Below, one piece after another: positions 13,938-28,800 of a stretch of DNA of 64,000 nucleotides. This DNA is from Phallusia mammillata (taxonomy: Eukaryota): positions 24,924,001 through 24,988,000 of the forward strand of contig OZ281495.1 in the NCBI GenBank assembly GCA_965637545.1. The letters are read 5' to 3'. How positions within the stretch are numbered: position 1 is the first letter of the stretch; each line of letters starts with the position of its first letter. The translations under genes and the position numbers were made by a program. Below the pieces are notes generated by a model. That model was not told where the DNA came from. It saw only the letters and a list, made by a program, of their open reading frames with translations, and ran no database searches.

Positions 13938-16900
13938 ATGCATAGAATATGCAGAAACATTTTACCGACAGCATCAAGAATTGGACACAATTCATTTCTT
14001 GGGACAAACACCCTCAGTCACAAACCAGCAACAGTTTTTGCTGTGAAACAATGTATATCGCTGTCAGGGCCAACAACTGGATATAAAAAGCAAGCAAAAA
14101 GTTTGCACCACAGTGATGTGAAAGTGTTGCAAAGCAACCCTTTTTTGGATCAAATCAACACTTCAACACTCCACAAGATACCTCAAGACACTTTGCTAAA
14201 ATTTGAACTTACAAAACTTCCAGGGGTGTATGCATCACTGTCAAAATGGTATCTTACACGTACGTATTTTATTCGCTCTTGCCTAGTCTGATTACTACTA
14301 ATTTGGACAGGTTTGGGATCAAATTGTTCTAGCAACATCCATGCCTATTTATAAGTCCATTGAAAGAGATTAAATTGAATTTTTGTAGTATTAAAGTTGG
14401 TGACTTCAATTTGCTTTAACCCATTATGTTCCACGGGGTGGCAACAATGCTGCTTATATTTCTTTTTTTAAGGAAATATAAGTGATTTAAGGAAATATAA
14501 GACAGGATTAGAACCCATAACCACTCAAAAAACAATGAATTGGGTGACTGTTATAAATAATCGTCGGTTGGAAATGAATAATCCAACATATTATTGCTAA
14601 ATATCAAACTATCTTTTGTTGAAATTTTTGTCGATCAATGTGTCTAAAAAATTTCAGTGTTTGTTGTGATGACTGCTGATGCTGGTTACTGTTTGGCCCC
14701 AGTGCAATTCCATCACTTCACATTTTTCTTGGCTACGATAGGAACTGGTCTATGTTCATGTTGTGCCAATTCCCTAAATCAGGTCAGCAGATTGTTAATA
14801 ACATATAATATTGGACCCCTTTATTTGTGATGAACATTATTTATAATGCCTTCTACAGATTGCAGAAGTTCCTTATGATGCACAGATGGATAGAACTAGA
14901 AACCGACCATTGGTGCGTGGAGTAATTACTCCCTTACATGCCCTTGGATTTTCAGTGTTTTCAGGAGTATCAGGCGTTGCCTGTCTTTACTATGGTTTGT
15001 GTACAATGTAACAATATTAAAAAGATTGGACTATTTACCACATAATTATTTGTTGAACAGGCACAAATTTATTGACTGCATTGCTTGGCTTATCAAACAT
15101 TTTTCTGTATGCGGCTGTCTACACTCCGCTGAAGAGACGGCATTGGTTCAACACCTGGGCAGGAGCAGTTGTTGGAGCCATTCCACCACTTATGGGATGG
15201 ACTGCTGCAACTGGACGCATTGACACAGGTGTTTGTTTTTCTTTAGTGCAGATATCAATTCAATAACATTTTTAAAACAAACAAATAAAGTTGGTATCCA
15301 GCCTAATTGTTTCTAGGTCTTTGGTTGTTTTTGAACTGTGTGTACATTGTCCTGCTATGACCAAAGTGGGCTAATAAACAGAACAAACATTTTGAGTTTA
15401 AGCTTTTTACAGATAAGATTGAATTAGCAGGCAAAAACCTTTGCTGTCATATTTCTAGCATAAATAAAATTCTGTTTTGACACAACCCACTACCACTATG
15501 TGTTGGGACCTATGCTTACATATTTTTATACATGTATTTGGAAACAGCTATGCCTTTAACCTAAAACAAAGGGACATGTATAATATAGGTCATATAATTG
15601 GGAAACTAAACCATGTTGCAAAACTTTCTGAAGTTTTTAATACATTTATGTATGAATTGTAAATTACAATTTCTATATGATTCTGTTTTTAGGGGCATTC
15701 ATTTTTGCCGGAATACTGTATGCATGGCAGTTTCCACATTTTTATGCACTTGCATGGAGGAGAAGAGGAGATTATGCTCGTGGATCATACCACATGTTGC
15801 CTTTGTCTCACCCTGGTGCTACCAGATATGTTGTACTATCTCATTCTTTGGCTTTATGGGGCCTGTGTGTTGCTTCTCCATTTACTGGTGTAACATCCCT
15901 GCTATTTATCCCTATGTCAGCACCAATGAATGCTTGGCTAACATACTCATCTCTGAAGTTTTTCAGGTAATTATTATATTTCACCATACAGAAGTACACA
16001 GCAACATGTTAATGTGTATGTTATTATGGGTCCCCTTCCCTGAAGGGGACACATATTGTTTTTGTCCGTATTTTTTTTTTCTTTTTTCTGTCTAACGCTG
16101 GCTTGTTAGACGCGTTTGGTTAAGAAAGAGTGCTTCAAATTTATTCAAATTTGCACAGATGTTAGTTATTAATCTAAATTTAATCCTCCTGAAGTTTGAC
16201 CCCGATTGACCCAGCGGTTCACCCACAGGCCCCCAAAATGCAAAATTTTTAAAACATGGTTTGTTATATGCGTTTGGTCAAGAAAGAGTGCTTCAAATTT
16301 GTTTAAATTTTGTCAGATGTTAGTTATTAACCAAAATTTGATCCTCTTGAAGTTTGACCCTGAATGACCCAAGGGTTCACCCACAGGCCCCCGAAACGTA
16401 AAATTTTTAACGCTGGTTTGGTAAAGAAAGAGTGCTTCAGATTTATTCAAATTTGGACATATGTTAGTTATTAATCCAAACTTGATCCTCCAGAAGTTTG
16501 ACCCCGAATTACCCAGTGGTTCACCCACAGGCCCCCGAAACGTAAATGTGTCTAACGCTCGTTTGGTCAAGAAAGACACTGTAGGCAGAAGTCCCAAGAG
16601 AGTAACTCACTGGTTTACGATAGCAGGAGGGCTCAGCTTGACGTCGGACAGACGTTTTACGAGACATCGTTTTGGTGATCAGAAATCAGCTGTTTTGCAC
16701 AGCAATGCTATTTCGTTTTATTAAGTTATCACTCACATTTTCAGTTTTGGCAAAGGTTTCACACCTATGACGTGATTTAAACCTAATAAGCGTGCTTCGG
16801 TTTCGTATATGTCAAGCAAAACTTGTTAATCAAAACAAAGTTGAAAAAATAAACTTGACATTTTTGCAAGATAAATGTTTTTTTTAAATGCTCGTTGTCA

Positions 16901-17797
16901 GGTCGGCCGCCGCATGACCACGGGTTACTTAAGGTCAACTAGTAGGTATTACTAACACAGTTCAGAACTTTCTTTCATCATAACGTAGCGTTTTTTTGGC
17001 AATAAATTTAGGAATCAACACTCAAGGCATGTATAAATTAGGTTAAACGGTGTTGTTGAACAGTAAGGACGGCGTATTGAAAACGGTGTCAATAGGTCAA
17101 ACAGTCGTTGCACCCTGAGAGGTTACTACAGGTCAATGGTTTTGCGAAACAAAGTTAAATGAAAAACAATTTCTTATGTGTACACTTGTAGCAAATTGCT
17201 TTTTAATTTAAAGTGTCTGTAACACAACTGTTACAGCTTTCTAGAAAAAAATGTGTTTAAAACCCGACCTTAGACGACAATATCTGGGTCAAAGCAAGAG
17301 ATTAAATTAAAGTATTTGTTTCGTTCTTTTTTAATGTTTTTGTAATTAAATGACAATAATAGTGCAAAAAGAATACGAACAAAAAATGTTTATTGTTGGG
17401 TTAATGCTTTCTAAAAATTTGTCCTTAAAAATCTAAAAGTCACCGCAACATTTGTTTACTGTAAATCCGCACAAACACGCGTGTGGGGACCCATTAGTTT
17501 TTGTTTACAAAAACAATCATATGTGTAGATCAAATGATGTGTATAGTAAATTGGTAAATATCGTATAGAATATATAAAATGGAAGTATATCAGAAAGCCA
17601 CCCTTCTAGTTTTAACACTGCATTTGTAATGTCTTTGTAGGCAGAAAAACAGCAAAAGTGCACAAACACTGTACAGGACAAGTCTGTATTACATCTTGCT
17701 GCTTTCAATTGCAATATGTGTGGACCGAAAGCTTTTACAAATTGATGAAGTCAAAATACCACCAAATGATTGTCAACTGGCAATGTCCAATATGTGA
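13938..17797 (+). CDS. COX10: Protoheme IX farnesyltransferase (heme O synthase), mitochondrial
   Basis: [15 protein letters not shown]; [27 protein letters not shown]; [32 protein letters not shown]; [13 protein letters not shown]. Last exon 17641-17797 ([22 protein letters not shown]...NM*) joins in phase. Confidence 0.93.
16094..16580. repeat. Tandem repeat, ~144-158-bp unit, about 3.2 copies, in the last COX10 intron
   Basis: AAGAAAGA(GTGCTTC) recurs at 16122, 16280, 16424 and 16569; GGTTCACCCACAGGCCCC is present in each full unit. Confidence 0.85.
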
Positions 17798-17965
17798 CAT
17801 AATAAAGTTCATTTTTGTAGTACAAAAACATGTGTGCTTTTTCTTATATCATGACAAAAGAAAGTTATGATGAAGCACAGTGAAGTAAATCAGAACAGAC
17901 AAATGTTTCCATTATATTTGTCATTTCCAGCAATTGATGAGGAAAAAAATGTAAAATCTGCGAGG

Positions 17966-18295
17966 TCACTTGTTTTTAAATTTTAAACTAACTTCCAATC
18001 GTAAAAACCCTTTGAGACAGTCATCCTCCACTTCCTTTTCAATAACTTCCAAAACTTTGGCTTTCACATCGCTAGAATTCTCATAATACTTAAGCAGTTC
18101 TTCAGCATGTTGTATCCACACACAGTTGGCACATCCTGAACCACAGCAAAGAGTGTCCAGTGGTTTGGGTGGAGGACCAACAGGGCTACCATTTGGCACT
18201 TTGGTTGATGCAAGCAAGTAAGGTATTCTGCATTTAGCAAGAATCTCTGTTCGCAGCAATGCAGAACAGGGCAGCAGGTACTTGAAGGAAAACAT
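17966..18295 (-). CDS. OXLD1: Oxidoreductase-like domain-containing protein 1 (intronless)
   Basis: PPPKP...CCGSGCANCVWIQHAEEL is the Oxidored-like motif; basic, hydroxylated N-terminus resembles a mitochondrial presequence. Confidence 0.88.
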   Translation of the reverse strand: MFSFKYLLPCSALLRTEILAKCRIPYLLASTKVPNGSPVGPPPKPLDTLCCGSGCANCVWIQHAEELLKYYENSSDVKAKVLEVIEKEVEDDCLKGFLRLEVSLKFKNK

Positions 18296-18298
18296 TGG

Positions 18299-19057
18299 CT
18301 AGCTTGTTACAGTCAAATATGTTGAAAGCAATTCTTCTTGTTTTAAAATGTCTCGAGTTGCAATCAGAACAACTGTTCTTGATGAGGTGTGGCATTCAAG
18401 TCCGTTAACACTGATGTTTGGTATAAACTCTCTGAGGTGAATGGGAAAATCTCTTGGAAAATCAAACTCCTGGTAATGAACGTTTGCTTTATATTCTTGG
18501 TTCTGGTTGTTGACATATTGGCCAACATTAAGTGGACACTTAAGTTTGTTTGTAAGCCATGTTATATCACAAAGTTCATATGGTCCTACTCTGTCTCTTC
18601 CAGCACAAGACTTGTATGTATACTTTGACAATCCACTGTCTTTTCCATCAATGTATATGTGGTCCTTACATCTAAACACAAATGAATTCCTGATGGATTG
18701 AAAAAATATGGCATTAGATGGGGTGTAAACAGTTCCAGGATATATTGCTGCTATGTTTCCCTTTGTTATGCACCCTGATGAAACAAACACACCTAAACCG
18801 GCATCAACAATGTTACTCCTTTGGCGAGATAACTTAAACCCCATTGATGACTCCATTACTTGTTCAATATCAGCGTTACCACATTTTTTAGCATTATGCA
18901 ATGCACAAAATAGGGATTCAAGTTGTTTTAATACAGATTGATCATCAACAGAGTTAGTTATGAGTGATACATTTCCAGTGTTTTGTTTGTATTTTGCAAG
19001 TATCCATGGCAGCAGACGTTTTTTGTATGAATTCCATGATTTAGCAAAATTCACCAT
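18299..19057 (-). CDS. SETD9: SET domain-containing protein 9 (intronless)
   Basis: GFKLSRQRSNIVDAGLGVFV...IYPGTVY...IFFQSIRNSFVFRCKDHIYIDG...PLNVGQYVNN...VVLIATRDI...EELLSTY. Confidence 0.88.
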   Translation of the reverse strand: MVNFAKSWNSYKKRLLPWILAKYKQNTGNVSLITNSVDDQSVLKQLESLFCALHNAKKCGNADIEQVMESSMGFKLSRQRSNIVDAGLGVFVSSGCITKGNIAAIYPGTVYTPSNAIFFQSIRNSFVFRCKDHIYIDGKDSGLSKYTYKSCAGRDRVGPYELCDITWLTNKLKCPLNVGQYVNNQNQEYKANVHYQEFDFPRDFPIHLREFIPNISVNGLECHTSSRTVVLIATRDILKQEELLSTYLTVTS

Positions 19058-19872
19058 GGTTTTTAATCACTAAGCATTTTATCCCTAAACAACAAGTTTT
19101 GAAATAAACAGCAATATCGTCCTATTTATTTGGTGACCTATACGCAGAAACCACAAACCTTACGGGTAAAATATATAAACAAAGTAATAGGGCACACAAA
19201 AACAAAACATGATTAACCACAGTACAATCCTATTGATGGAACGAAAACATGTAATATTCGTTTGTACTCCCATTGTTCAATTACTTGTAAAACAAAATTG
19301 CAAGAAATGTCACAGCTCGCCTCTCACAAACATACCCCTAATTTTGTTGCCAAGTATAAAAGATGACACAAGCTTCGGCAAAGTAAATGACCCAAATGCG
19401 CAATCATAGTGACGCAATACTACACACCTTCGCGCAATCACATTATCACACACCCCCATTGGCTGAGTGATCTCGATTTGGCAAATTGAAGAAAAATATT
19501 TAAAAAAATTGTTAACCCAGCACTAGCAAGAAAATTATTCTGTTTAAAAAAATTAAAATTATTCTCTGTATCTGCGGCGCAATAACCAACGATGCGTGCA
19601 AACTGCGGCAATACAGCTTTATTGCAGACTTGCAGCGGATTGTGTTTTGTTTACATGCACTTCGAGTTCGACGTTTTGAGGTAAGTTTGTTTTACTGTGT
19701 CCTTTGTGCACGTAGCCCCAAACCTGACTAGGTAAAGCTGTTCAAATGTTTGCTTGATGCAATTTCGTAACCTTAGACAATATTGCCGATATTGCTGAAC
19801 AGCTTGTAGTCGGTGCTTTTTATTTAGAAGGGACCTGAGAGGTAATTAATCACGTAGTTAACTTTTTGCAAA

Positions 19873-22800
19873 ATGGCGAAACGGAAAAGACAAGCCAATA
19901 AAACGAGCGAGAAATCCAAAAAGCAGAAGGTTCCAACAAAAAATGAAGAATACGCATATTTAAAAGAGAAGCAGGATCCAATGCCCGAAGTTTACACCAA
20001 GAAACCACCTCAGCCAACTGAGAAAAAGATTGGCCAACTCACCGAAAGTCAAGTTAACCAGTTTTTTGACAAAGTATGTAATTTGTAGTACTCTAAATTA
20101 AATGTGCCAACATATTTGAACAAAACCATCCTGCATAATTTTAGGGTTTCGTTTTAGTGAAAGATTTTTTTGCCCCCCATCGACTTGATGTTGTACGTGA
20201 AGCTGTGAACAAGCTAGTGGATACTGTTGCAAATAAACTGTACAAGGCTGGAAAAATTCAAAGTAAACAGTTTTTTTTAATGAAGTATGTTAGTTATTTG
20301 TTCTGGTAAAATGTAATGTTTTGAAGACAAGCACGAAGACAAAGGTTTCAATGATCGGTTAACACACCTGGAAAAGGAATTTAAAGGCACAGCAGTTATT
20401 CTTCATAAAATGGGTATTCTGCCCAAAGAATTTCAAGATCTTTGGTCTGATGAAAAACTTCTGAATGTTGCTGAACAATTAGTTGGACCCGAACTAGCTG
20501 GTCACCCTGTATGGAATTTAAGAACCAAGGTATGTTGAATTTTGTACTTCAAAAGTGCTCATTCTAAAACAGAAACTATTGAGTGAGCATACATTTCGCT
20601 TTTTCAGACACCTCACAATGAACAAACTACAGTTCCATGGCATCAAGGTGTGTTGGGTTGGATAGACAATGTTAAAAAGTAATTCATTTCAATGGGTACT
20701 TTCTCTGATTTTCTTTGTGTTAAAATAACAATCTATTCAAACCTTTAGCTGTGTCTTGCTGTGTGCAGATAATGCCTACTTGGAGCCCTGTAGTTTAGAA
20801 GTGATGCAGCTGACAGCATGGATTCCACTTGTTGATGCTAATATGGTTAATGGATGCATGCAGGTTGGGTTTTGCTTTAAAACAGCCCAGTTAAAAGCTA
20901 ATCTGAATACAATGTGTTATTGCTCAGGTTGCATCAGGTGGTCATAAGAAAGGATTCACTGCCAAACATACATGCTGTGCAGGAGGAACTTGGTATGTGC
21001 AGTTAAGTGAAGAAGCCATGGTGGATGAGTTGGGTGTGGATTTGAAAAAAGATATTGTCACATGTGAAGTTCCCTATGGAGGTGTTTTGTTTTTGAATAA
21101 TGCTGTTCCTCATCAAAGGTAATAAACTTAGTTAATGTTGTTTGTTACATCTCCACGTTCAGTTACGCATGATTAACTTGTCTCATTATTCCACTGCTAT
21201 GACGTTACAATCGCCATGTGCGTAACAGTAAAATTAGAAGGCCTTTGTCTGTATGTTGCAATGATTAGTTCATTTTACTGTACAACGTGGTCGAGTAAGG
21301 TGATTTATTACTGCATTAAGTAAATTCGTTTGTGTTGCATTTTTAGAGACGAATAAGGCTAAATTAAATATTGTGACGACTGACTAATTAATCTTCAAGT
21401 GAAGGCTGTTTACCGTGATTGTCGGTGAGTGTTTAATTCGATTTGTGACCTAAATTAATTCATGGCTTTATGTGTGACTTATGGCATGCTGTATTTTCCT
21501 ATAGTGATTGCAGCGATTGTTTCATCGTCTTGCAACTGTTGATACGTGTACTGTACCTGTTGACCTGTGTCGCAAAATAGTTGGTAAGTTAGTCATTGGC
21601 ATTTTTGTGCGTTGACATATGTCAATGTGTTTCGTTTTCTTGTTTAGAAAACCGTTCCCGTACCCGTTCCCGTTTCGTTCTCAACCCTGTTTCTGTCCGT
21701 TCCTGATTGTGTACGACGTTGTGGTTGTTGCCGCTGTTGTCGCTGTGGATTATTACACGTGATTCGGGAAGTGTGATTTGTGTGGGAAAGGGCGGGGCGT
21801 GTTTCAACGTGACAAACCCCTTTGTGAGGCTCAGCCTTGCAGGTCGGCCGTTCAGAGTCTACATAAAGAAGTTTTCAACTGTTGCTCGTTGAAAAGGAAG
21901 TTTCAACTGTCGCTGATTGAGAGAAGCTTTCTACTCTTCCTTATTGGAAAGAAGCTGTTGCTTGGTTAAAAAATGAATTCCGACACGATTGAAGAAGATA
22001 AGGGTGAACAGCTCATCAAATTGCAACGTTTATTGCAAGAATCCTACACCCAAACGGAACGTTTAATGGTCAGTCCCAATAACTTAGTTTCTGTACATTC
22101 ATCGGTGCGAATTATAAATGAAAGGTACCGACTTCTTGTGGAGCATATTACTTCAAATTCACCTGAAAATGAAGACCTTGTCAAGGATTTGTTAAAGCGA
22201 TACGCTGAGGAGAAGACGGAGTTTGATAGCAGGGTTGCTGAATGGATCGAAAAGGCCCAGCCTGCTACGTCCCCACCGCCACAAGTTGGTTCAAAAAAGT
22301 CGGTTAAAAGTTGCACTTCTAGTTGCCCTACTTCAGCAAGTACGAGTTCCAGTGTTCGTAGAACTGAAGCACGAATTAAGCTTGAGATGGCTCGCGCAAA
22401 ACTTCGTCAGGCCAAGGAAAGACAGGACGAGGAGAACGAGCGACGAAAGAAGCTGCTTGATGACGAACGCAAGTTGCGTGATGAAGAACGGAAGTTGCGT
22501 GAGTCAGAGCGCCGATTGACAGCCGACGCAGAAATTCGCGAGGTACAACGTCAAGCCGAACTAGCCGAAATCGAAGCTCGCGGATGGGAAGGTAAATTCG
22601 AAGCGGAATTCGTTTATCCGCCAACCGTAGAGAGGCCTTTTGTGCAAACGGTCACCGAATGTCTAAAACCTGTACCGCGTTGTGATAGGCAGGAGCTGCC
22701 TAAAGTAAGTCATCAGCCTCCTATCTATGCTACTCCGCAATACGATTGTCAAAATAGGAATAATCCCACAGTAGCGCAGGAACCTCGTTACAGCTCAGAT

Positions 22801-25800
22801 GAGCGTTTTCTACCGCGTCCGAAGATAATGTCATTTAACGGCGATCCAATGGAATACTGGACGTTCATTCGCAACTTTGAAGCGCACGTTGCCACTAAAG
22901 TTCACTCTGACGATTTGCGGTTGGTTTATCTGCTGCAACATTGTGATGACAAAGTGCGACCTAAAATTGATCACTTGACGAAAAGGCCAGTCGAGGGTTA
23001 CCGACAGGCACGTCAAAAGCTATTTCATGAGTACGGACAGCCGCACATTATCGCAAATGCCAGTGAGCAGCATTTGAAGAAGAGTCCTCGCTTGAAAGGA
23101 GATCAACCGGAACGACTAATGCAGTTTGCAGATCTGCTGGAAAAATGTCTCACTACACTGGAGGATATCGATGAATATGCCGGTCTTAACTCACTTGACA
23201 CCATGCTGCAGCTCATTGACAAGTTGCCCTATCGCTTGCAGGAAAAATGGATAGAGCGATCAGTCGAAGTTCTGCATCGCACTAATCGTGAAGCCGGGTT
23301 TAGCCACTTTGTTCAGTTTGTTTCGGAACGTGCAGAGGTGGAAAATTCCCTCTACGGAAGTAGGATTATGGGATATAGGCGCGACAAGGATCCTGGTCCA
23401 CCGATGAGAAAGCCAAGAGCGTCTGCGTACGTTGTGAACCCAGTTGAAGTTCGACAGCGTCCGACAGAGAGGCCGACTACTTCCGCTACGTGTCTGTTCT
23501 GTGGTAAGGCTCACGATTTGCCTAAGTGCTTTGAGTTTAAACGTAAAACGTACTCCGAACGTGTGGAATTCGTCAGTCGTAAGAGATTGTGCTTCAGATG
23601 CCTTACTCCAGGTCACCGTGTTAGACGATGCAAGGCGAGAACTGCCTGCGAAGAAAACGACTGTTCGAGTCACTACCACCACACATTGCTGCATAGGCCT
23701 GCTCCAGCCGCAAAGCCAGAGTCACAAGCGACACCAGCTGAGCCGCAAAAGGTCGCTTCATGTTCAGTGGCAACGCCGGGCGAATGTGGTTACGAAGACG
23801 TGTATCAATGCGTCGTACCGGTCGAGGTAAAATACGAAGGCCGGAAGGTTTTAACTTACGCATTTTTGGATATCGGCTCTACCGGAACCTTCTGTAACCA
23901 AAGGTTGATTAAAGCCCTGGGCATGAAAAGTGAAACTAAGGAGATTGTTTTGCAAACACTGACAGATGAAGCCAAAGAGCATACGGCTGTTTCGGTGAGT
24001 TTCTCTGTTTCTCCAGTAGGTGGCGGAGATGATATATTTCTCCCTAAAGTAATAACCGTTGGTGAAATCCCCGTTCGTCCTAATCCGATTCTTAGCAAAG
24101 AAGCATTAAGGGGTGCCCCACATTTACGTGACTTGGATTTTCCCTTAATAGAGAAAGGAACTGTAACATTGCTGATTGGTCTGGATAATCCAGACGCCTT
24201 GTTCATTGAGGAGATGCGTCGTGGTCCAAAAGGGAAACCGTTTGCTGTCAAGACACCTTTTGGATGGACATTATTTGGCCCTTCACTCCTTCCGTGTGCA
24301 TCATCGAGGTATCAGGTAAACTTCGTGAAGTCTAGAGACAGCTCTTTACAGAAGCAAATCTCTAGTCTGTGGGAGACAGATTTTGGGAACGAAACTGCTG
24401 TTCTAGATTTCCCCACGTCGCGCGAAGACAGAAAGACGTATGGTATCATGCAAAAGAACGTGAAAATGGTGGAAGGTCACTATGAGCTGCCGTTGCCGTG
24501 GAGAGAAAGCTCAGCTTGTTTGCCAGATAACAAGCCAATGGCCGAAAGACGGCTGACGTACTTGAAGCGACGCCTGGAGAAGGATCACTCACTGAAGGGA
24601 AAGTACGTGAGCACAATACAGTCCTACCTCGAGAAAGGGTACGCAAGAGAGATACCTCGAGAAGAAATCGAATCGGTTGATGGTGTTTGCTGGTATTTAC
24701 CACACCATCCTGTACTTCATCCCCGTAAGCCAGACAAGGTTCGTGTAGTTTTTGATTGCGCTGCAAAGCACAAGGGCGTTTCCCTCAATGATGTGCTGAT
24801 GCAGGGCCCGGATCTCGTAAACAGTTTGGTGGGTGTTTTGACTCGATTTCGCAAAGAGCGGTACGCTTTGGTGGCCGATATAGAATCGATGTTCCACCAG
24901 ATTCGTGTTACCCCTAAGGACAGGGACGCCTTGCGATTTCTGTGGTGGCCAGGAGGGGATTTGACAAATCAACCAACAGCGCATCAAATGACTGTGCACC
25001 TGTTCGGGGCGACTTCATCCCCTAGTTGCGCGAGTTTTTGCTTGAAGCAAACAGCCTTGGATTTTGGTCAAGATTTCAATGCACAAGCGTCTTCGGTCGT
25101 CAGAAGAAATTTTTACGTGGACGACTGCCTGACTTCGGTTGCATCTACAGTGGAGGGAATTCAAATGACCAAAGAGATTTCAGATTTGTTGTCACGCGGA
25201 GGATTCCACTTGACAAAATGGCTCAGTAATAACCAGAAGATTCTGTCAAAAATTCCTGAAGAAGAGAGGTCAAAGGCAGTGCGAAACAAAAGCTTGAGTG
25301 ATGACGTCACAGAGAGAGTGCTTGGTGTCCACTGGAACGTGCACGAAGATACGTTTGGATTTAAGGTCAACCTTCCTGAAACGGCGAAGACTCGAAGAGG
25401 ACTTCTTTCTGCATTGAGTTCACTGCACGACCCTCTTGGATTCGTTGCACCGTGCACGCTTGGAGCCAAATTATTACTCCAAGGTTTGTGCAAGCGTGGA
25501 GTTGGCTGGGACGACTGCATTTTGGAATCGGAAGCAACACAATGGAGCGAATGGCTTGGGCGTTTACCGAAGCTTCATGACCTGTGTCTTCCTCGTTGTT
25601 TTAAGCCCGATGATTTCGGCGATGTGCAAAGTTGGGAGTTACACCACTTTGCAGATGCTTCCTCCGTGGCCTACGGAGCTGTGTGTTATCTGAGGATAGT
25701 CGACGTCGGTTCGCGTGTTCACTGCGTGTTTCTTGTTGGCAAGTGTCGACTAGCGCCGCTGAAAACAGTGTCAATTCCAAGACTGGAACTGACGGCGGCA

Positions 25801-28800
25801 GTTCTATCCGTGAAGCTAGATGAAATGATGCGACGAGAGCTTGGCCTACCGGTGCATCGGTCTGTGTTTTGGACAGACTCCACTGCCGTCCTACAGAGCA
25901 TCAGGAATTCGAAGAAGAGATTCCCTACGTTCGTTGCTAATCGAATTGCAAAGATTGAAAGGCAAAGCGATCCTTTAAGCTGGAGACATGTTCCTTCAAA
26001 GCTCAATCCGGCAGACGAGGCGTCACGTGGATTGACGTCAGAAGCGTTAGTGACGTCTGGCCGCTGGTTGCGCGGTCCGCAGTTTTTGTTGGAATCTGAG
26101 GATCACTGGCCTGTGAGTCCGATTGTTTTACCCGACTTGCCTGCTGAGTTCAGTCCCGTAAAAAAGCAGGAAGTCTCCATACATATGGTCGTAGAGAGGC
26201 AGTCCATAGTTGAGAGGATCATCCATCGGTACTCTTCGTTGCATCGTTTGAAAAAGAGTATCGCCTGGCTGCTTCGATATAAGAAGTTTTTACTGTCGCG
26301 TGTTCGCGGTAACAAGGCTGTGGTGGAGAATCGTGGATCATTATCTGTTGAAGAATTAAATGCTGCCGAACTGGAGTTGATTAAATATGTGCAGCGAAAG
26401 CATTTCAGCCCTGAGCTTGCTGCGTTGGAGAAGGGATCTCTTTCCAAGACCTCTGTGAAACGTCACATGTTCAAACTAAATCCAATGGTTGTTAACTCCG
26501 TGCTTCGAGTTGGTGGTCGACTAGAAAAGGCTTTCATTCCGTACGATGCCAAACATCCGATTCTTCTACCACATTCGTGTCATTTTACTGACTTGGTTAT
26601 CGAGAGACATCATCGTCTTGTCGGACATTCTGGGATGGGCCACACTTGGTCGTCGCTGCGCCAAAGGTTTTGGATACTTAAAGGTGGAGTAGCCGTACGC
26701 CGAGTGATTGGGAATTGCCTGTTCTGCAAGAGAAGAAATGCTTCCGCTGGAGTACAGAGGATGGCAGACCTTCCTTCAGCAAGACTGCATCCGGACGAGC
26801 CCCCGTTTTCACACGTAGGGGTGGATTATTTCGGTCCCTTTCCAGTTAGGCAGGGACGGAGCATCGTGAAACGGTACGGGGCAGTGTTTACCTGCCTATC
26901 AATTCGAGCTGTCCATATCGAAGTTGCCCACAGCCTATCTACAGACTCGTTCATCGACGCGCTTCGTCGCTTCATTGGTCGGCGTGGGAATCCTGTAAAT
27001 ATATATTCCGACAATGGGACGAACTTTGTCGGTGCAGAACGGATACTGAGAGAATCACTGCAGTCTTGGAACCAAGTTCACATTGAGGAGTACCTGAAAC
27101 AAAGCGGAATTCGTTGGTCGTTCAATCCCCCGACAGCCAGTCATATGGGAGGTGCGTGGGAACGAATGGTGCGCTCCATCCGGCGAATTCTGACGTCTCT
27201 GATGACACAGCAAGTTGTTTCCGACGAAACATTGTCAACGCTTTTTGTTGAGGTTGAGTCAATACTCAACTCGCGTCCTCTTATTCCTGTCACCTTTGAT
27301 CCCCGCGATGATGAGCCGATCACACCCAATCATCTCCTGCTCATGAGATGCAACTCGAATTTGCCTCCTGGCTTGTTCGACAAAAAGGACTGTTACGTGC
27401 GGCGCCGTTGGGCGCAAGTGCAGTACTTGGCGAATCAATTTTGGATCCGCTGGGTTCGCGAATATCTACCGAACATCATTTCCAGGCAGAAGTGGTTCCA
27501 GAAGAGGAGAGATCTCCAGATCAACGATGTGGTTCTCGTCGTGGATGATTCACAGCCACGCTCCAAGTGGTTGATGGGTCGCGTTGCGGATACATTTCCC
27601 GATAAAACGGGAACTGTACGCTCGGTGCTTGTGCAAACGCGATACAATCGTGTCAAACGACCGATTGCAAAACTTTGCTTGATTGTCGCCGCTGAAAGTG
27701 ATGCTTAGTGTGCTGTTTTGTTTATTGAATTTCGTTGAACGTTCGATGTTTGTTTGTGTGTGAAATGTATTTACCCGGGTCATACATTTAGGTGGGGGTA
27801 TGTTACATCTCCACGTTCAGTTACGCATGATTAACTTGTCTCATTATTCCACTGCTATGACGTTACAATCGCCATGTGCGTAACAGTAAAATTAGAAGGC
27901 CTTTGTCTGTATGTTGCAATGATTAGTTCATTTTACTGTACAACGTGGTCGAGTAAGGTGATTTATTACTGCATTAAGTAAATTCGTTTGTGTTGCATTT
28001 TTAGAGACGAATAAGGCTAAATTAAATATTGTGACGACTGACTAATTAATCTTCAAGTGAAGGCTGTTTACCGTGATTGTCGGTGAGTGTTTAATTCGAT
28101 TTGTGACCTAAATTAATTCATGGCTTTATGTGTGACTTATGGCATGCTGTATTTTCCTATAGTGATTGCAGCGATTGTTTCATCGTCTTGCAACTGTTGA
28201 TACGTGTACTGTACCTGTTGACCTGTGTCGCAAAATAGTTGGTAAGTTAGTCATTGGCATTTTTGTGCGTTGACATATGTCAATGTGTTTCGTTTTCTTG
28301 TTTAGAAAACCGTTCCCGTACCCGTTCCCGTTTCGTTCTCAACCCTGTTTCTGTCCGTTCCTGATTGTGTACGACGTTGTGGTTGTTGCCGCTGTTGTCG
28401 CTGTGGATTATTACACGTGATTCGGGAAGTGTGATTTGTGTGGGAAAGGGCGGGGCGTGTTTCAACGTGACAAACCCCTTTGTGAGGCTCAGCCTTGCAG
28501 GTCGGCCGTTCAGAGTCTACATTGTTGTTGACAGAGGGTAATTTTGAAACTTTTGCAGTTTAGAAAATCAATCTGAGATTATTCGTTGGAGCCTTGATTT
28601 GAGATGGCAAAAACCTGATAAACCAAATGGATTCTATAGCCTGAAAGACAGTGTCTTAATGAGGACTAAAAAGGATAAAGACTACAAAATTAATTGGGAT
28701 AAAATGGCAAACACTGACCGAACCAAATTGCAGATGGAAAAGTTGGTATGTTGATTTTGTGTTAGAAGATTCTTGCATTAAATGCTTTCAACTACTTTCC

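What the first reader, a model, noticed from the sequence alone, without database searches (positions are those of the whole stretch)
17966..19057. SETD9 and OXLD1 joined in frame by TAG-CCA-ATG: a bicistronic unit with no room for a normal 3' UTR or promoter
Seen: on the minus strand the SETD9 ORF ends GTA ACA AGC TAG (18301-18299), followed by CCA and the OXLD1 ATG (18295). Both ORFs are intronless and in the same frame. Established: ascidian operons are resolved by SL trans-splicing at acceptors that directly abut the upstream mRNA. Inference: three mechanisms are possible. (a) The AG of the SETD9 stop codon doubles as a trans-splice acceptor, leaving SETD9 with a zero-length 3' UTR. (b) Ribosomes reinitiate after termination. 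(c) UAG-C readthrough gives a ~363-aa SETD9-OXLD1 fusion. The presequence-like OXLD1 N-terminus favours separate translation. The pyrimidine tract before the TAG is weak.
Basis: partly seen in the sequence, partly recalled or inferred. Interest (0 to 1): 0.72.

Follow-up and report, generated by a model that had tools for sequence, protein, structure and literature searches.

The report
Sea-squirt SETD9-OXLD1 two-gene operon
In the sea squirt Phallusia mammillata two small intronless genes for mitochondria-linked proteins (SETD9, OXLD1) lie 3 bases apart and appear on one leader-capped RNA; this is a very compact case of the known sea-squirt operon, shared by at least seven tunicates, and how the second protein is made is untested.

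Summary
On the minus strand a 252-aa SETD9 ORF (19057-18299) ends in TAG, then CCA, then the ATG (18295) of a 109-aa OXLD1 ORF, in the same frame.

The genome is Phallusia mammillata. RNA contigs from four studies each cover both ORFs without a break. One contig carries the ascidian spliced leader at an acceptor AG (19086/19085) 27 nt upstream of the SETD9 ATG.

The SETD9-then-OXLD1 tandem, both intronless, is old:
- Ciona intestinalis: 76-nt gap, other frame.
- Clavelina lepadiformis: 33-nt gap.
- Four unidentified tunicates of a sister subclade: all overlap by 4 nt (ATGA).
- Three other tunicate-clade lineages: unlinked.

Neither exact spacing nor frame is conserved, so a readthrough fusion is very unlikely. 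An AG lies 1-4 nt before the OXLD1 ATG in all six junctions I could read.

My best reading is an ascidian operon whose downstream cistron is trans-spliced at the stop codon's own AG, with SETD9 read from the unresolved dicistronic RNA. No leader junction at OXLD1 was seen, but contigs cannot show one. Termination-reinitiation stays a live rival.

The scan has noted similar abutting gene pairs elsewhere in this genome. I class it as a new variant of a known kind, of moderate interest.

The parts
19087..19127 (-). Outron or primary-transcript sequence upstream of the leader acceptor. The promoter lies further upstream and was not mapped.
   Evidence: The X3 contig extends to 19127, past the acceptor. 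There is no RNA depth at 19201-19800 in any of the 4 runs.
19085..19086 (-). AG acceptor for spliced-leader trans-splicing at the 5' end of the unit.
   Evidence: The X1 contig end at 19086 carries letters whose reverse complement is GAGTACGGG + ATTCTATTTGAATA, followed by the genomic AG. That spells the ascidian SL ATTCTATTTGAATAAG (SL sequence from PMC1488885 Table 1). The X6 contig ends at the same base.
19058..19084 (-). SETD9 5' UTR after the leader. It contains a 4-codon upstream ORF (ATG 19077 to TAA 19063) and a second candidate AG (19071-19070).
   Evidence: Read directly from the sequence.
18299..19057 (-). SETD9 coding sequence, intronless, 252 aa plus the TAG stop.
   Evidence: 100% identical to Phallusia mammillata SETD9-like; E 1e-63 to named vertebrate SETD9.
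18299..18301 (-). SETD9 stop codon TAG. Its AG (18300-18299) is the only AG between the last SETD9 sense codon and the OXLD1 ATG, so it is the candidate trans-splice acceptor for OXLD1.
   Evidence: Sequence. An AG lies 1-4 nt before the OXLD1 ATG in 6 of 6 species, against a background of 0.21. Its use as an acceptor is inferred, not shown.
18296..18298 (-). CCA, the whole spacer between the two coding sequences.
   Evidence: RNA contigs of 4 studies agree with the window here.
17966..18295 (-). OXLD1-like coding sequence, intronless, 109 aa plus TGA. Met1 is the only methionine, and the N-terminus looks like a presequence.
   Evidence: PF09791, E 5e-10. Homologous ORFs lie directly after SETD9 in L001, L002, L008, L012 and L013.
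17582..17965 (-). At least part of the shared 3' UTR. The poly(A) site was not mapped. The first AATAAA is at 17394, inside repeats.
   Evidence: X1 and X6 contigs run to 17582; hexamer scan. The contigs are unstranded, so the convergent + strand gene may contribute to this coverage.
17641..17797 (+). Last coding exon of a convergent UbiA/COX10-like gene. It overlaps the OXLD1 3' UTR in antisense.
   Evidence: X3 and X17 contigs join 17639/17641 to the end of + strand exon 15677-15966. That exon hits PF01040 UbiA. The reading frame runs to a stop at 17795-17797.

Best explanation
SETD9 and OXLD1 form an ancient tunicate two-gene operon.

Shown:
- RNA covers both ORFs without a break.
- The 5' end receives the 16-nt spliced leader at AG 19086/19085.
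- The gene pair is conserved across tunicates, with spacing from +76 to -4 nt.

Inferred: each primary transcript takes one of two mutually exclusive routes.
1. It stays dicistronic. This leader-capped RNA is the SETD9 messenger, with OXLD1 sitting in its 3' UTR.
2. It is trans-spliced a second time at the AG just before the OXLD1 start. In Phallusia that is the AG of the SETD9 stop codon TAG (18300-18299). The product is a monocistronic mRNA reading SL-CCA-AUG, from which the presequence-bearing OXLD1 is made. The upstream fragment is then discarded.
For: - One contig per run spans 17582/17639 to 19086/19127 in four RNA data sets from four studies, and no second contig lies on the region. The SL plus a template-switch tail sits at 19086 in X1.
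- The SL sequence is verified in PMC1488885.
- Ciona operons are known to lack intercistronic DNA, to be rich in single-exon genes, to mostly lack AATAAA upstream of the boundary, and to have been proposed to yield either the upstream or the downstream mRNA per transcript (PMC1488885, PMC2760879).
- The pair is adjacent in Ciona (76 nt), Clavelina (33 nt) and four sister-subclade tunicates (ATGA overlap) (tree).
- An AG ends 1-4 nt before the OXLD1 ATG in 6 of 6 junctions. The background is 0.21 per ATG, which gives about 0.002 for 4 independent lineages.
- In the ATGA species no 3' end can form between the ORFs without losing the SETD9 stop. This argues that the dicistronic RNA is the SETD9 messenger.
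- There is no AATAAA or ATTAAA in the 60 nt before the Phallusia junction.
- OXLD1 has a single Met, so its mRNA must include 18295.
Against: - No SL junction at OXLD1 was seen in any of the four runs. Contigs clip such tips, so this is weak evidence.
- The acceptor context is poor. The pyrimidine tract in Phallusia is weak, and the nearest AG is an AAG (-3 A) in Clavelina and in the ATGA species.
- Contigs are unstranded, and a convergent gene overlaps the 3' end.
- The relative amounts of dicistronic and monocistronic RNA are unknown.
Confidence: 0.45

Rival explanations
1. Translational coupling. OXLD1 is made from the leader-capped dicistronic mRNA. Ribosomes that terminate at the SETD9 UAG re-start 3 nt downstream at the OXLD1 AUG (termination-reinitiation). 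This would act with or without some trans-splicing.
For: - The stop and start are 3 nt apart in Phallusia.
- They overlap as ATGA in four species, even though the two bases before it and the whole OXLD1 presequence have diverged.
- The dicistronic RNA with the SL at its 5' end is the only RNA form seen in 4 studies.
- The AGs in front of the ATG are mostly poor AAG acceptors.
Against: - Ciona has a 76-nt gap and Clavelina a 33-nt gap, so tight coupling is not a conserved requirement.
- The upstream ORF is 252 codons long. Reinitiation after long ORFs normally needs a special element, and the calicivirus-type motif TGGGA is present in only 1 of 6 species.
- There is no structure beyond chance at the junction.
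- Conservation of ATGA is also expected simply because both the start and the stop are needed.
- Tunicates already have a general mechanism, SL trans-splicing, for downstream cistrons.
Confidence: 0.22
2. Trans-splicing at the stop codon's AG also creates the SETD9 3' end, which is polyadenylated directly after UAG. The mature SETD9 mRNA then has a zero-length 3' UTR, as in canonical Ciona operons where the poly(A) site abuts the acceptor.
For: - In 19 of 19 mapped Ciona operons the upstream poly(A) site lies at the acceptor AG, and 16 of 18 lack AATAAA (PMC1488885).
- TAG supplies both a stop and a YAG acceptor.
Against: - In the four ATGA species the same cut would remove the stop codon, so this cannot be the general mode for this gene pair.
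- No contig ends or branches at 18299 in four runs.
- There is no poly(A) signal variant nearby except TTTAAA at -52.
Confidence: 0.15
3. OXLD1 has its own promoter or capped start inside the SETD9 coding sequence, and the RNA across the junction is only SETD9's long 3' UTR.
For: The data do not exclude it, because contigs cannot show internal 5' ends. OXLD1 stands alone in one tunicate lineage (L009-L011).
Against: - Tight same-strand adjacency (from -4 to 76 nt) has been kept across deep tunicate divergence. An independent gene would not need that.
- Ascidian downstream operon genes are usually SL trans-spliced: 72% have SL ESTs (PMC2760879).
Confidence: 0.06
4. UAG readthrough gives a roughly 363-aa SETD9-OXLD1 fusion protein.
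For: The two ORFs are in the same frame with no stop between them in Phallusia, and also in Clavelina (33 nt).
Against: - The frame differs in Ciona and in all four ATGA species.
- The context UAG-CCA is not a known readthrough motif, and no downstream structure is present.
- The OXLD1 presequence would be buried inside the fusion.
- None of the six longer SETD9 homologues I scanned (300-411 aa) has the Oxidored-like domain.
Confidence: 0.02

Closest known systems
Ciona intestinalis SL-resolved operons without intercistronic DNA (Satou et al. 2006, PMC1488885; Satou et al. 2008, PMC2760879)
   Same: - Same-strand genes lie less than 100 nt apart.
- It is mostly a two-gene arrangement, rich in single-exon genes.
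- The same 16-nt leader is used.
- Dicistronic RNA is detectable.
- There is no AATAAA before the boundary.
- The same gene pair is adjacent in Ciona itself.
   Different: - In the described operons the mRNAs abut but each keeps its UTRs. Here the coding sequences themselves are 3 nt apart, and they overlap as ATGA in relatives. The only acceptor outside SETD9 sense codons is therefore the stop codon's AG.
- The canonical cut-and-polyadenylate model leaves no 3' UTR, or in the relatives no stop codon.
- SL addition to the downstream gene is not shown here.
Caenorhabditis elegans SL1-type operons (no intercistronic space; cited in PMC1488885)
   Same: The poly(A) site and the trans-splice site coincide. 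Processing for the upstream or the downstream mRNA is thought to be mutually exclusive.
   Different: Those operons keep a canonical AAUAAA and normal UTRs. The phylum differs, and the origin may be independent.
Viral termination-reinitiation (calicivirus VP1/VP2 with TURBS; influenza B M1/BM2 UAAUG). This comparison is from my own knowledge.
   Same: Stop and start overlap or lie a few nt apart (AUGA, UAAUG), and the downstream ORF follows a long upstream ORF.
   Different: There is no conserved 18S-complementary motif upstream. This is a cellular nuclear gene pair, and the spacing is relaxed in Ciona and Clavelina.

Membership tests
Ascidian SL-resolved operon (operational definition of Satou 2006/2008) | Two or more genes on the same strand, with less than 100 nt between them. 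| tested here: met
   There are 3 nt between the coding sequences.
Ascidian SL-resolved operon (operational definition of Satou 2006/2008) | RNA spanning the cistron boundary (polycistronic transcript). | tested here: met
   One contig per run crosses 18295-18301 in 4 RNA data sets of 4 studies. Caveat: these are assembled, unstranded contigs.
Ascidian SL-resolved operon (operational definition of Satou 2006/2008) | The downstream cistron receives the spliced leader at an acceptor at the boundary. | tested here: inconclusive
   No SL-bearing contig end lies at or near 18299, but contigs drop short tips. An AG is present 1-4 nt before the ATG in 6 of 6 species.
Ascidian SL-resolved operon (operational definition of Satou 2006/2008) | The upstream mRNA poly(A) site directly abuts the acceptor. 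| not testable with these tools
   This needs raw 3'-end reads. The single read-laying run returned contigs only.
Ascidian SL-resolved operon (operational definition of Satou 2006/2008) | The organism uses the ascidian SL, and the unit is trans-spliced at its 5' end (optional for the first cistron). | tested here: met
   ATTCTATTTGAATA plus the genomic AG sits at 19086/19085 in the X1 contig.
Termination-reinitiation (TURBS-type coupling) | Stop and restart codons overlap or lie within a few nt. | tested here: met
   The junction reads TAGccaATG here, and ATGA in L008, L012, L013 and the P0010 contig.
Termination-reinitiation (TURBS-type coupling) | A conserved upstream element complementary to 18S rRNA (motif UGGGA) within about 100 nt. 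| tested here: not met
   TGGGA is present only in L013, 1 of 6 species.
Termination-reinitiation (TURBS-type coupling) | The downstream protein is made from the dicistronic mRNA. | not testable with these tools
   This needs a reporter mRNA or Ribo-seq.
Programmed stop-codon readthrough | An in-frame downstream ORF, a readthrough-prone context or structure, and conservation of the frame in relatives. | tested here: not met
   The ORF is in frame here, but the context is UAG-CCA, the fold z-score is +0.36, and the frame differs in 5 of 7 linked species.
SETD9 protein family | Full-length similarity to named SETD9 proteins. | tested here: met
   It is 38-46% identical over 96-100% of its length to named vertebrate SETD9, E 1e-63 to 1e-53. 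The Pfam SET model itself gives no hit for this protein. Relatives give faint SET hits.
OXLD1 / Oxidored-like (PF09791) | A Pfam PF09791 match above the gathering score. | tested here: met
   39.3 bits against a cutoff of 24, E 5e-10, residues 41-77.

The most novel reading that the evidence does not exclude
In a set of tunicate operons the inter-ORF space has shrunk to 3 nt or to an ATGA overlap. The downstream protein is then made, wholly or partly, by termination-reinitiation on a leader-capped dicistronic mRNA. That would be prokaryote-style translational coupling of two nuclear genes in a chordate. Here it would couple two orphan mitochondrial proteins (SETD9, OXLD1) whose conserved pairing would also point to a shared function.
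Probability: 0.2. Interest if true: 0.8.

Novelty: new variant of a known kind. Interest (0 to 1): 0.5.

Why it matters
How ascidian operons without intercistronic DNA are resolved has been open since 2006. The open points are whether the trans-splicing cut itself makes the upstream 3' end, and whether each transcript can give only one of the two mRNAs.

This pair gives a natural test case. The coding sequences are 3 nt apart here and overlap as ATGA in relatives. In the relatives, a cut at the boundary would cost the upstream gene its stop codon.

Three further points follow:
- A real, conserved gene (OXLD1) is missing from the gene calls shown for the Ciona and Clavelina loci, because it hides in the SETD9 '3' UTR'.
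- The deep conservation of SETD9 next to OXLD1 is a lead to a functional link. Both proteins are reported in mitochondria (PMC9006661, PMC8664129) and both are poorly understood.
- A convergent COX10-like gene lies beside the pair in three lineages.

Tried and rejected
- **Readthrough fusion.** Rejected on frame non-conservation, stop-codon context and lack of structure, and on the absence of the Oxidored-like domain in six longer SETD9 homologues.
- **Leaky scanning.** Rejected: 19 ATGs precede the OXLD1 AUG in the leader-spliced RNA, against 14.5 expected, so there is no depletion.
- **TURBS-like motif.** Not conserved.
- **Rfam scan of 17000-19600 and folding of the junction.** Nothing found.
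- **Exact-sequence look-ups of Phallusia and Ciona OXLD1**, meant to find monocistronic SL-bearing transcript contigs. Neither is on record.
- **Word search with Phallusia OXLD1.** Only one relative came back (P0073).
- **Supplement of PMC11155486**, checked for Ciona acceptor sites at this locus. Operon genes were excluded there and no entry was found.
- **Species of the four ATGA contigs.** A literature search for the four SRA accessions found nothing, so their species remain unidentified.
- **NCBIfam hits of OXLD1 to HemK/PrmB methyltransferases.** Weak (E 0.01-0.07, far below the cutoffs); treated as noise.
- **PDB sequence search with SETD9.** No hit.

Full report
**Observation**

Reading the minus strand and the ORF list confirm the finding letter by letter.
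- A 252-codon ORF runs from ATG 19057 to TAG 18301-18299.
- CCA follows at 18298-18296.
- ATG at 18295 opens a 109-codon ORF that ends with TGA at 17968-17966.
- Both ORFs are uninterrupted and in the same frame.

The upstream product is 100% identical to a UniRef entry named SET domain-containing protein 9-like of Phallusia mammillata. That names the organism. It aligns end to end with named SETD9 proteins of fish and mammals. The downstream product matches Pfam PF09791, Oxidored-like, above the curated cutoff. Its only methionine is the first residue, so any OXLD1 messenger must include 18295.

**RNA evidence**

The tools gave one reads call, and it returned Logan contigs from four runs of four different studies.
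- In each run a single contig covers the whole unit (17582 or 17639 up to 19086, 19089 or 19127). No second contig lies on 17635-19026.
- Nothing lies on 19201-19800 in any run. The runs therefore behave as RNA, not DNA.
- The contigs agree with the window at the junction.
- In X1 the contig end at 19086 carries extra letters. Their reverse complement reads GAGTACGGG-ATTCTATTTGAATA, followed by the genomic AG. This is the ascidian spliced leader ATTCTATTTGAATAAG (Table 1 of PMC1488885) preceded by a template-switch tail.

What is shown: the 5' end of the unit is trans-spliced at AG 19086/19085, and RNA molecules cross the 3-nt spacer.

What is not shown:
- any leader junction at OXLD1;
- any poly(A) end at the SETD9 stop;
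- the strand of the RNA;
- the relative amounts of the RNA forms.

Contig assembly clips short tips, so the missing leader junction is not evidence of absence.

**Relatives**

| Lineage | Locus | Stop-to-ATG spacing | Frame |
|---|---|---|---|
| Phallusia mammillata | window | +3 | same |
| Ciona intestinalis | L001 | +76 | other |
| Clavelina lepadiformis | L002 | +33 | same, no stop between |
| Sister subclade (four unidentified tunicates) | L008, L012, L013, P0010 contig | -4 (ATGA overlap) | other |

- In Ciona and Clavelina, SETD9 is also intronless and an unannotated OXLD1 ORF follows it. In Ciona an ATTAAA lies just after the stop.
- A SETD9 tree places seven further sequences in a well-supported tunicate clade with two subclades.
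- In the three ATGA junctions I could read, the two bases before ATGA differ (ca, ac, at; C-terminal Q, T, I). The OXLD1 presequence after it has diverged in sequence and length, yet the overlap is kept.
- A UbiA/COX10-like gene converges on the pair in Phallusia, Clavelina and L008.
- EMC4 lies upstream in two sister-subclade species.
- Three other tunicate-clade lineages have SETD9 without OXLD1 behind it (L003, L004-L007, L014). In the samples that gave L004, OXLD1 sits alone on other contigs (L009-L011).

So the pairing is ancient but not universal, and neither the 3-nt spacing nor the frame is conserved.

**What this means for the three mechanisms**

*Readthrough.* It needs a conserved frame, and the frame is not conserved. 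The context UAG-CCA is not a known readthrough signal. The region folds no better than shuffles (z +0.36). No Rfam family matches. None of the six longer SETD9 homologues I scanned has the Oxidored-like domain. I put it at about 2%.

*Leaky scanning.* It is excluded by 19 upstream ATGs.

*Trans-splicing.*
- The prior is strong. About a fifth of Ciona genes sit in operons that lack intercistronic DNA, are rich in single-exon genes, mostly lack AATAAA before the boundary, and have SL-bearing downstream mRNAs (PMC1488885, PMC2760879, PMC7986045).
- In support, an AG ends 1-4 nt before the OXLD1 ATG in all six junctions. The background is 0.21 per ATG in these sequences.
- In Phallusia the only such AG outside SETD9 sense codons is the AG of the stop codon.
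- Against it, the acceptors look weak. The pyrimidine tract is poor in Phallusia, and the AG is an AAG in Clavelina and the ATGA species.

*Where the SETD9 3' end forms.* The ATGA species matter here. With overlapping stop and start, no cut between the ORFs can leave SETD9 with a stop codon. In those species SETD9 must be read from an RNA that continues into OXLD1. By parsimony the same holds in Phallusia, where the leader-capped RNA covering both ORFs is the only form seen. This fits the 2006 proposal that a given operon transcript yields either the upstream or the downstream mRNA.

*Termination-reinitiation.* It remains a serious rival.
- For it: stop-start proximity is extreme in five of seven linked species.
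- Against it: there is no conserved 18S-complementary motif. The upstream ORF is long. Ciona and Clavelina tolerate 76 and 33 nt. ATGA would be conserved anyway, because both codons are needed.

**Comparison with the known**

The unit meets the operational definition of an ascidian operon: same strand, less than 100 nt apart, boundary-spanning RNA, leader use, and single-exon genes. The defining step, leader addition to the downstream cistron, could not be tested.

It differs from the described Ciona operons in one respect. Not only the mRNAs but the coding sequences abut or overlap, which strains the canonical model in which one cut serves both mRNAs.

I found no paper that mentions SETD9 and OXLD1 together, and none that describes stop-codon acceptors in ascidians. 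That search covers open-access text only.

Earlier notes of this scan, which are unchecked AI notes, list other abutting pairs in the same genome with 1, 2, 1, 14 and 23 nt spacers. This pair is therefore one member of a recurring class in Phallusia rather than a singular oddity.

**Function**

Human OXLD1 is imported into mitochondria and processed there (PMC8664129). SETD9 is listed as an orphan SET-domain methyltransferase that has been observed in mitochondria (PMC9006661). The conserved operon, next to a COX10-like gene, is a lead for a shared mitochondrial role and nothing more. From my own memory only, the human genes lie on different chromosomes. The linkage would then be tunicate-specific. 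I did not test this.

**Verdict**

This is a conserved, extremely compact ascidian operon, a new variant of a known kind. The route to OXLD1 protein is unresolved but directly testable.

Noticed in passing
window 15677-15966 (+) and 17641-17797 (+): A UbiA/COX10-like gene on the + strand converges on the operon. RNA contigs splice exon 15677-15966 to 17641, and the frame ends at 17795-17797, only 169 nt from the OXLD1 stop. The two 3' ends must therefore overlap in antisense. The same convergent UbiA neighbour is present in Clavelina (L002) and L008.
   Followed up: partly
window 17200-17635: Repeat-rich stretch inside the COX10-like intron. Many short RNA contigs with high summed depth and many variants lie on it, and all long contigs break there.
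   Followed up: no
window 19063-19077 (-): The leader-spliced SETD9 5' UTR holds a 4-codon upstream ORF (ATG CTT AGT GAT TAA) 5 nt before the strong-context SETD9 start (aaaccATGG). A second AG at 19071-19070 could give a leader junction that skips the upstream ATG.
   Followed up: no
L001 4842-5153; L002 4799-5140: The OXLD1 ORF is not among the called genes at the Ciona intestinalis and Clavelina lepadiformis loci. The Phallusia OXLD1 sequence is not in the protein collection searched. A conserved gene seems to be missed because it sits behind SETD9 on the same RNA.
   Followed up: partly
window 21973-27708 (+): An uninterrupted 1911-aa ORF of a Pao/BEL-type LTR retrotransposon. Pfam hits are Peptidase_A17, RVT_1, Integrase_H2C2, DUF1759 and DUF5641.
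   Followed up: partly
L008 1650-2186; P0010 contig 138-674: EMC4 lies upstream of SETD9 on the same strand in two sister-subclade tunicates, about 580 and 1070 nt away. This may be a longer conserved block, EMC4-SETD9-OXLD1.
   Followed up: no
window 16313-16597 (-): An ORF with an internal tandem duplication (...[26 protein letters not shown] twice). It is probably a repeat element.
   Followed up: no
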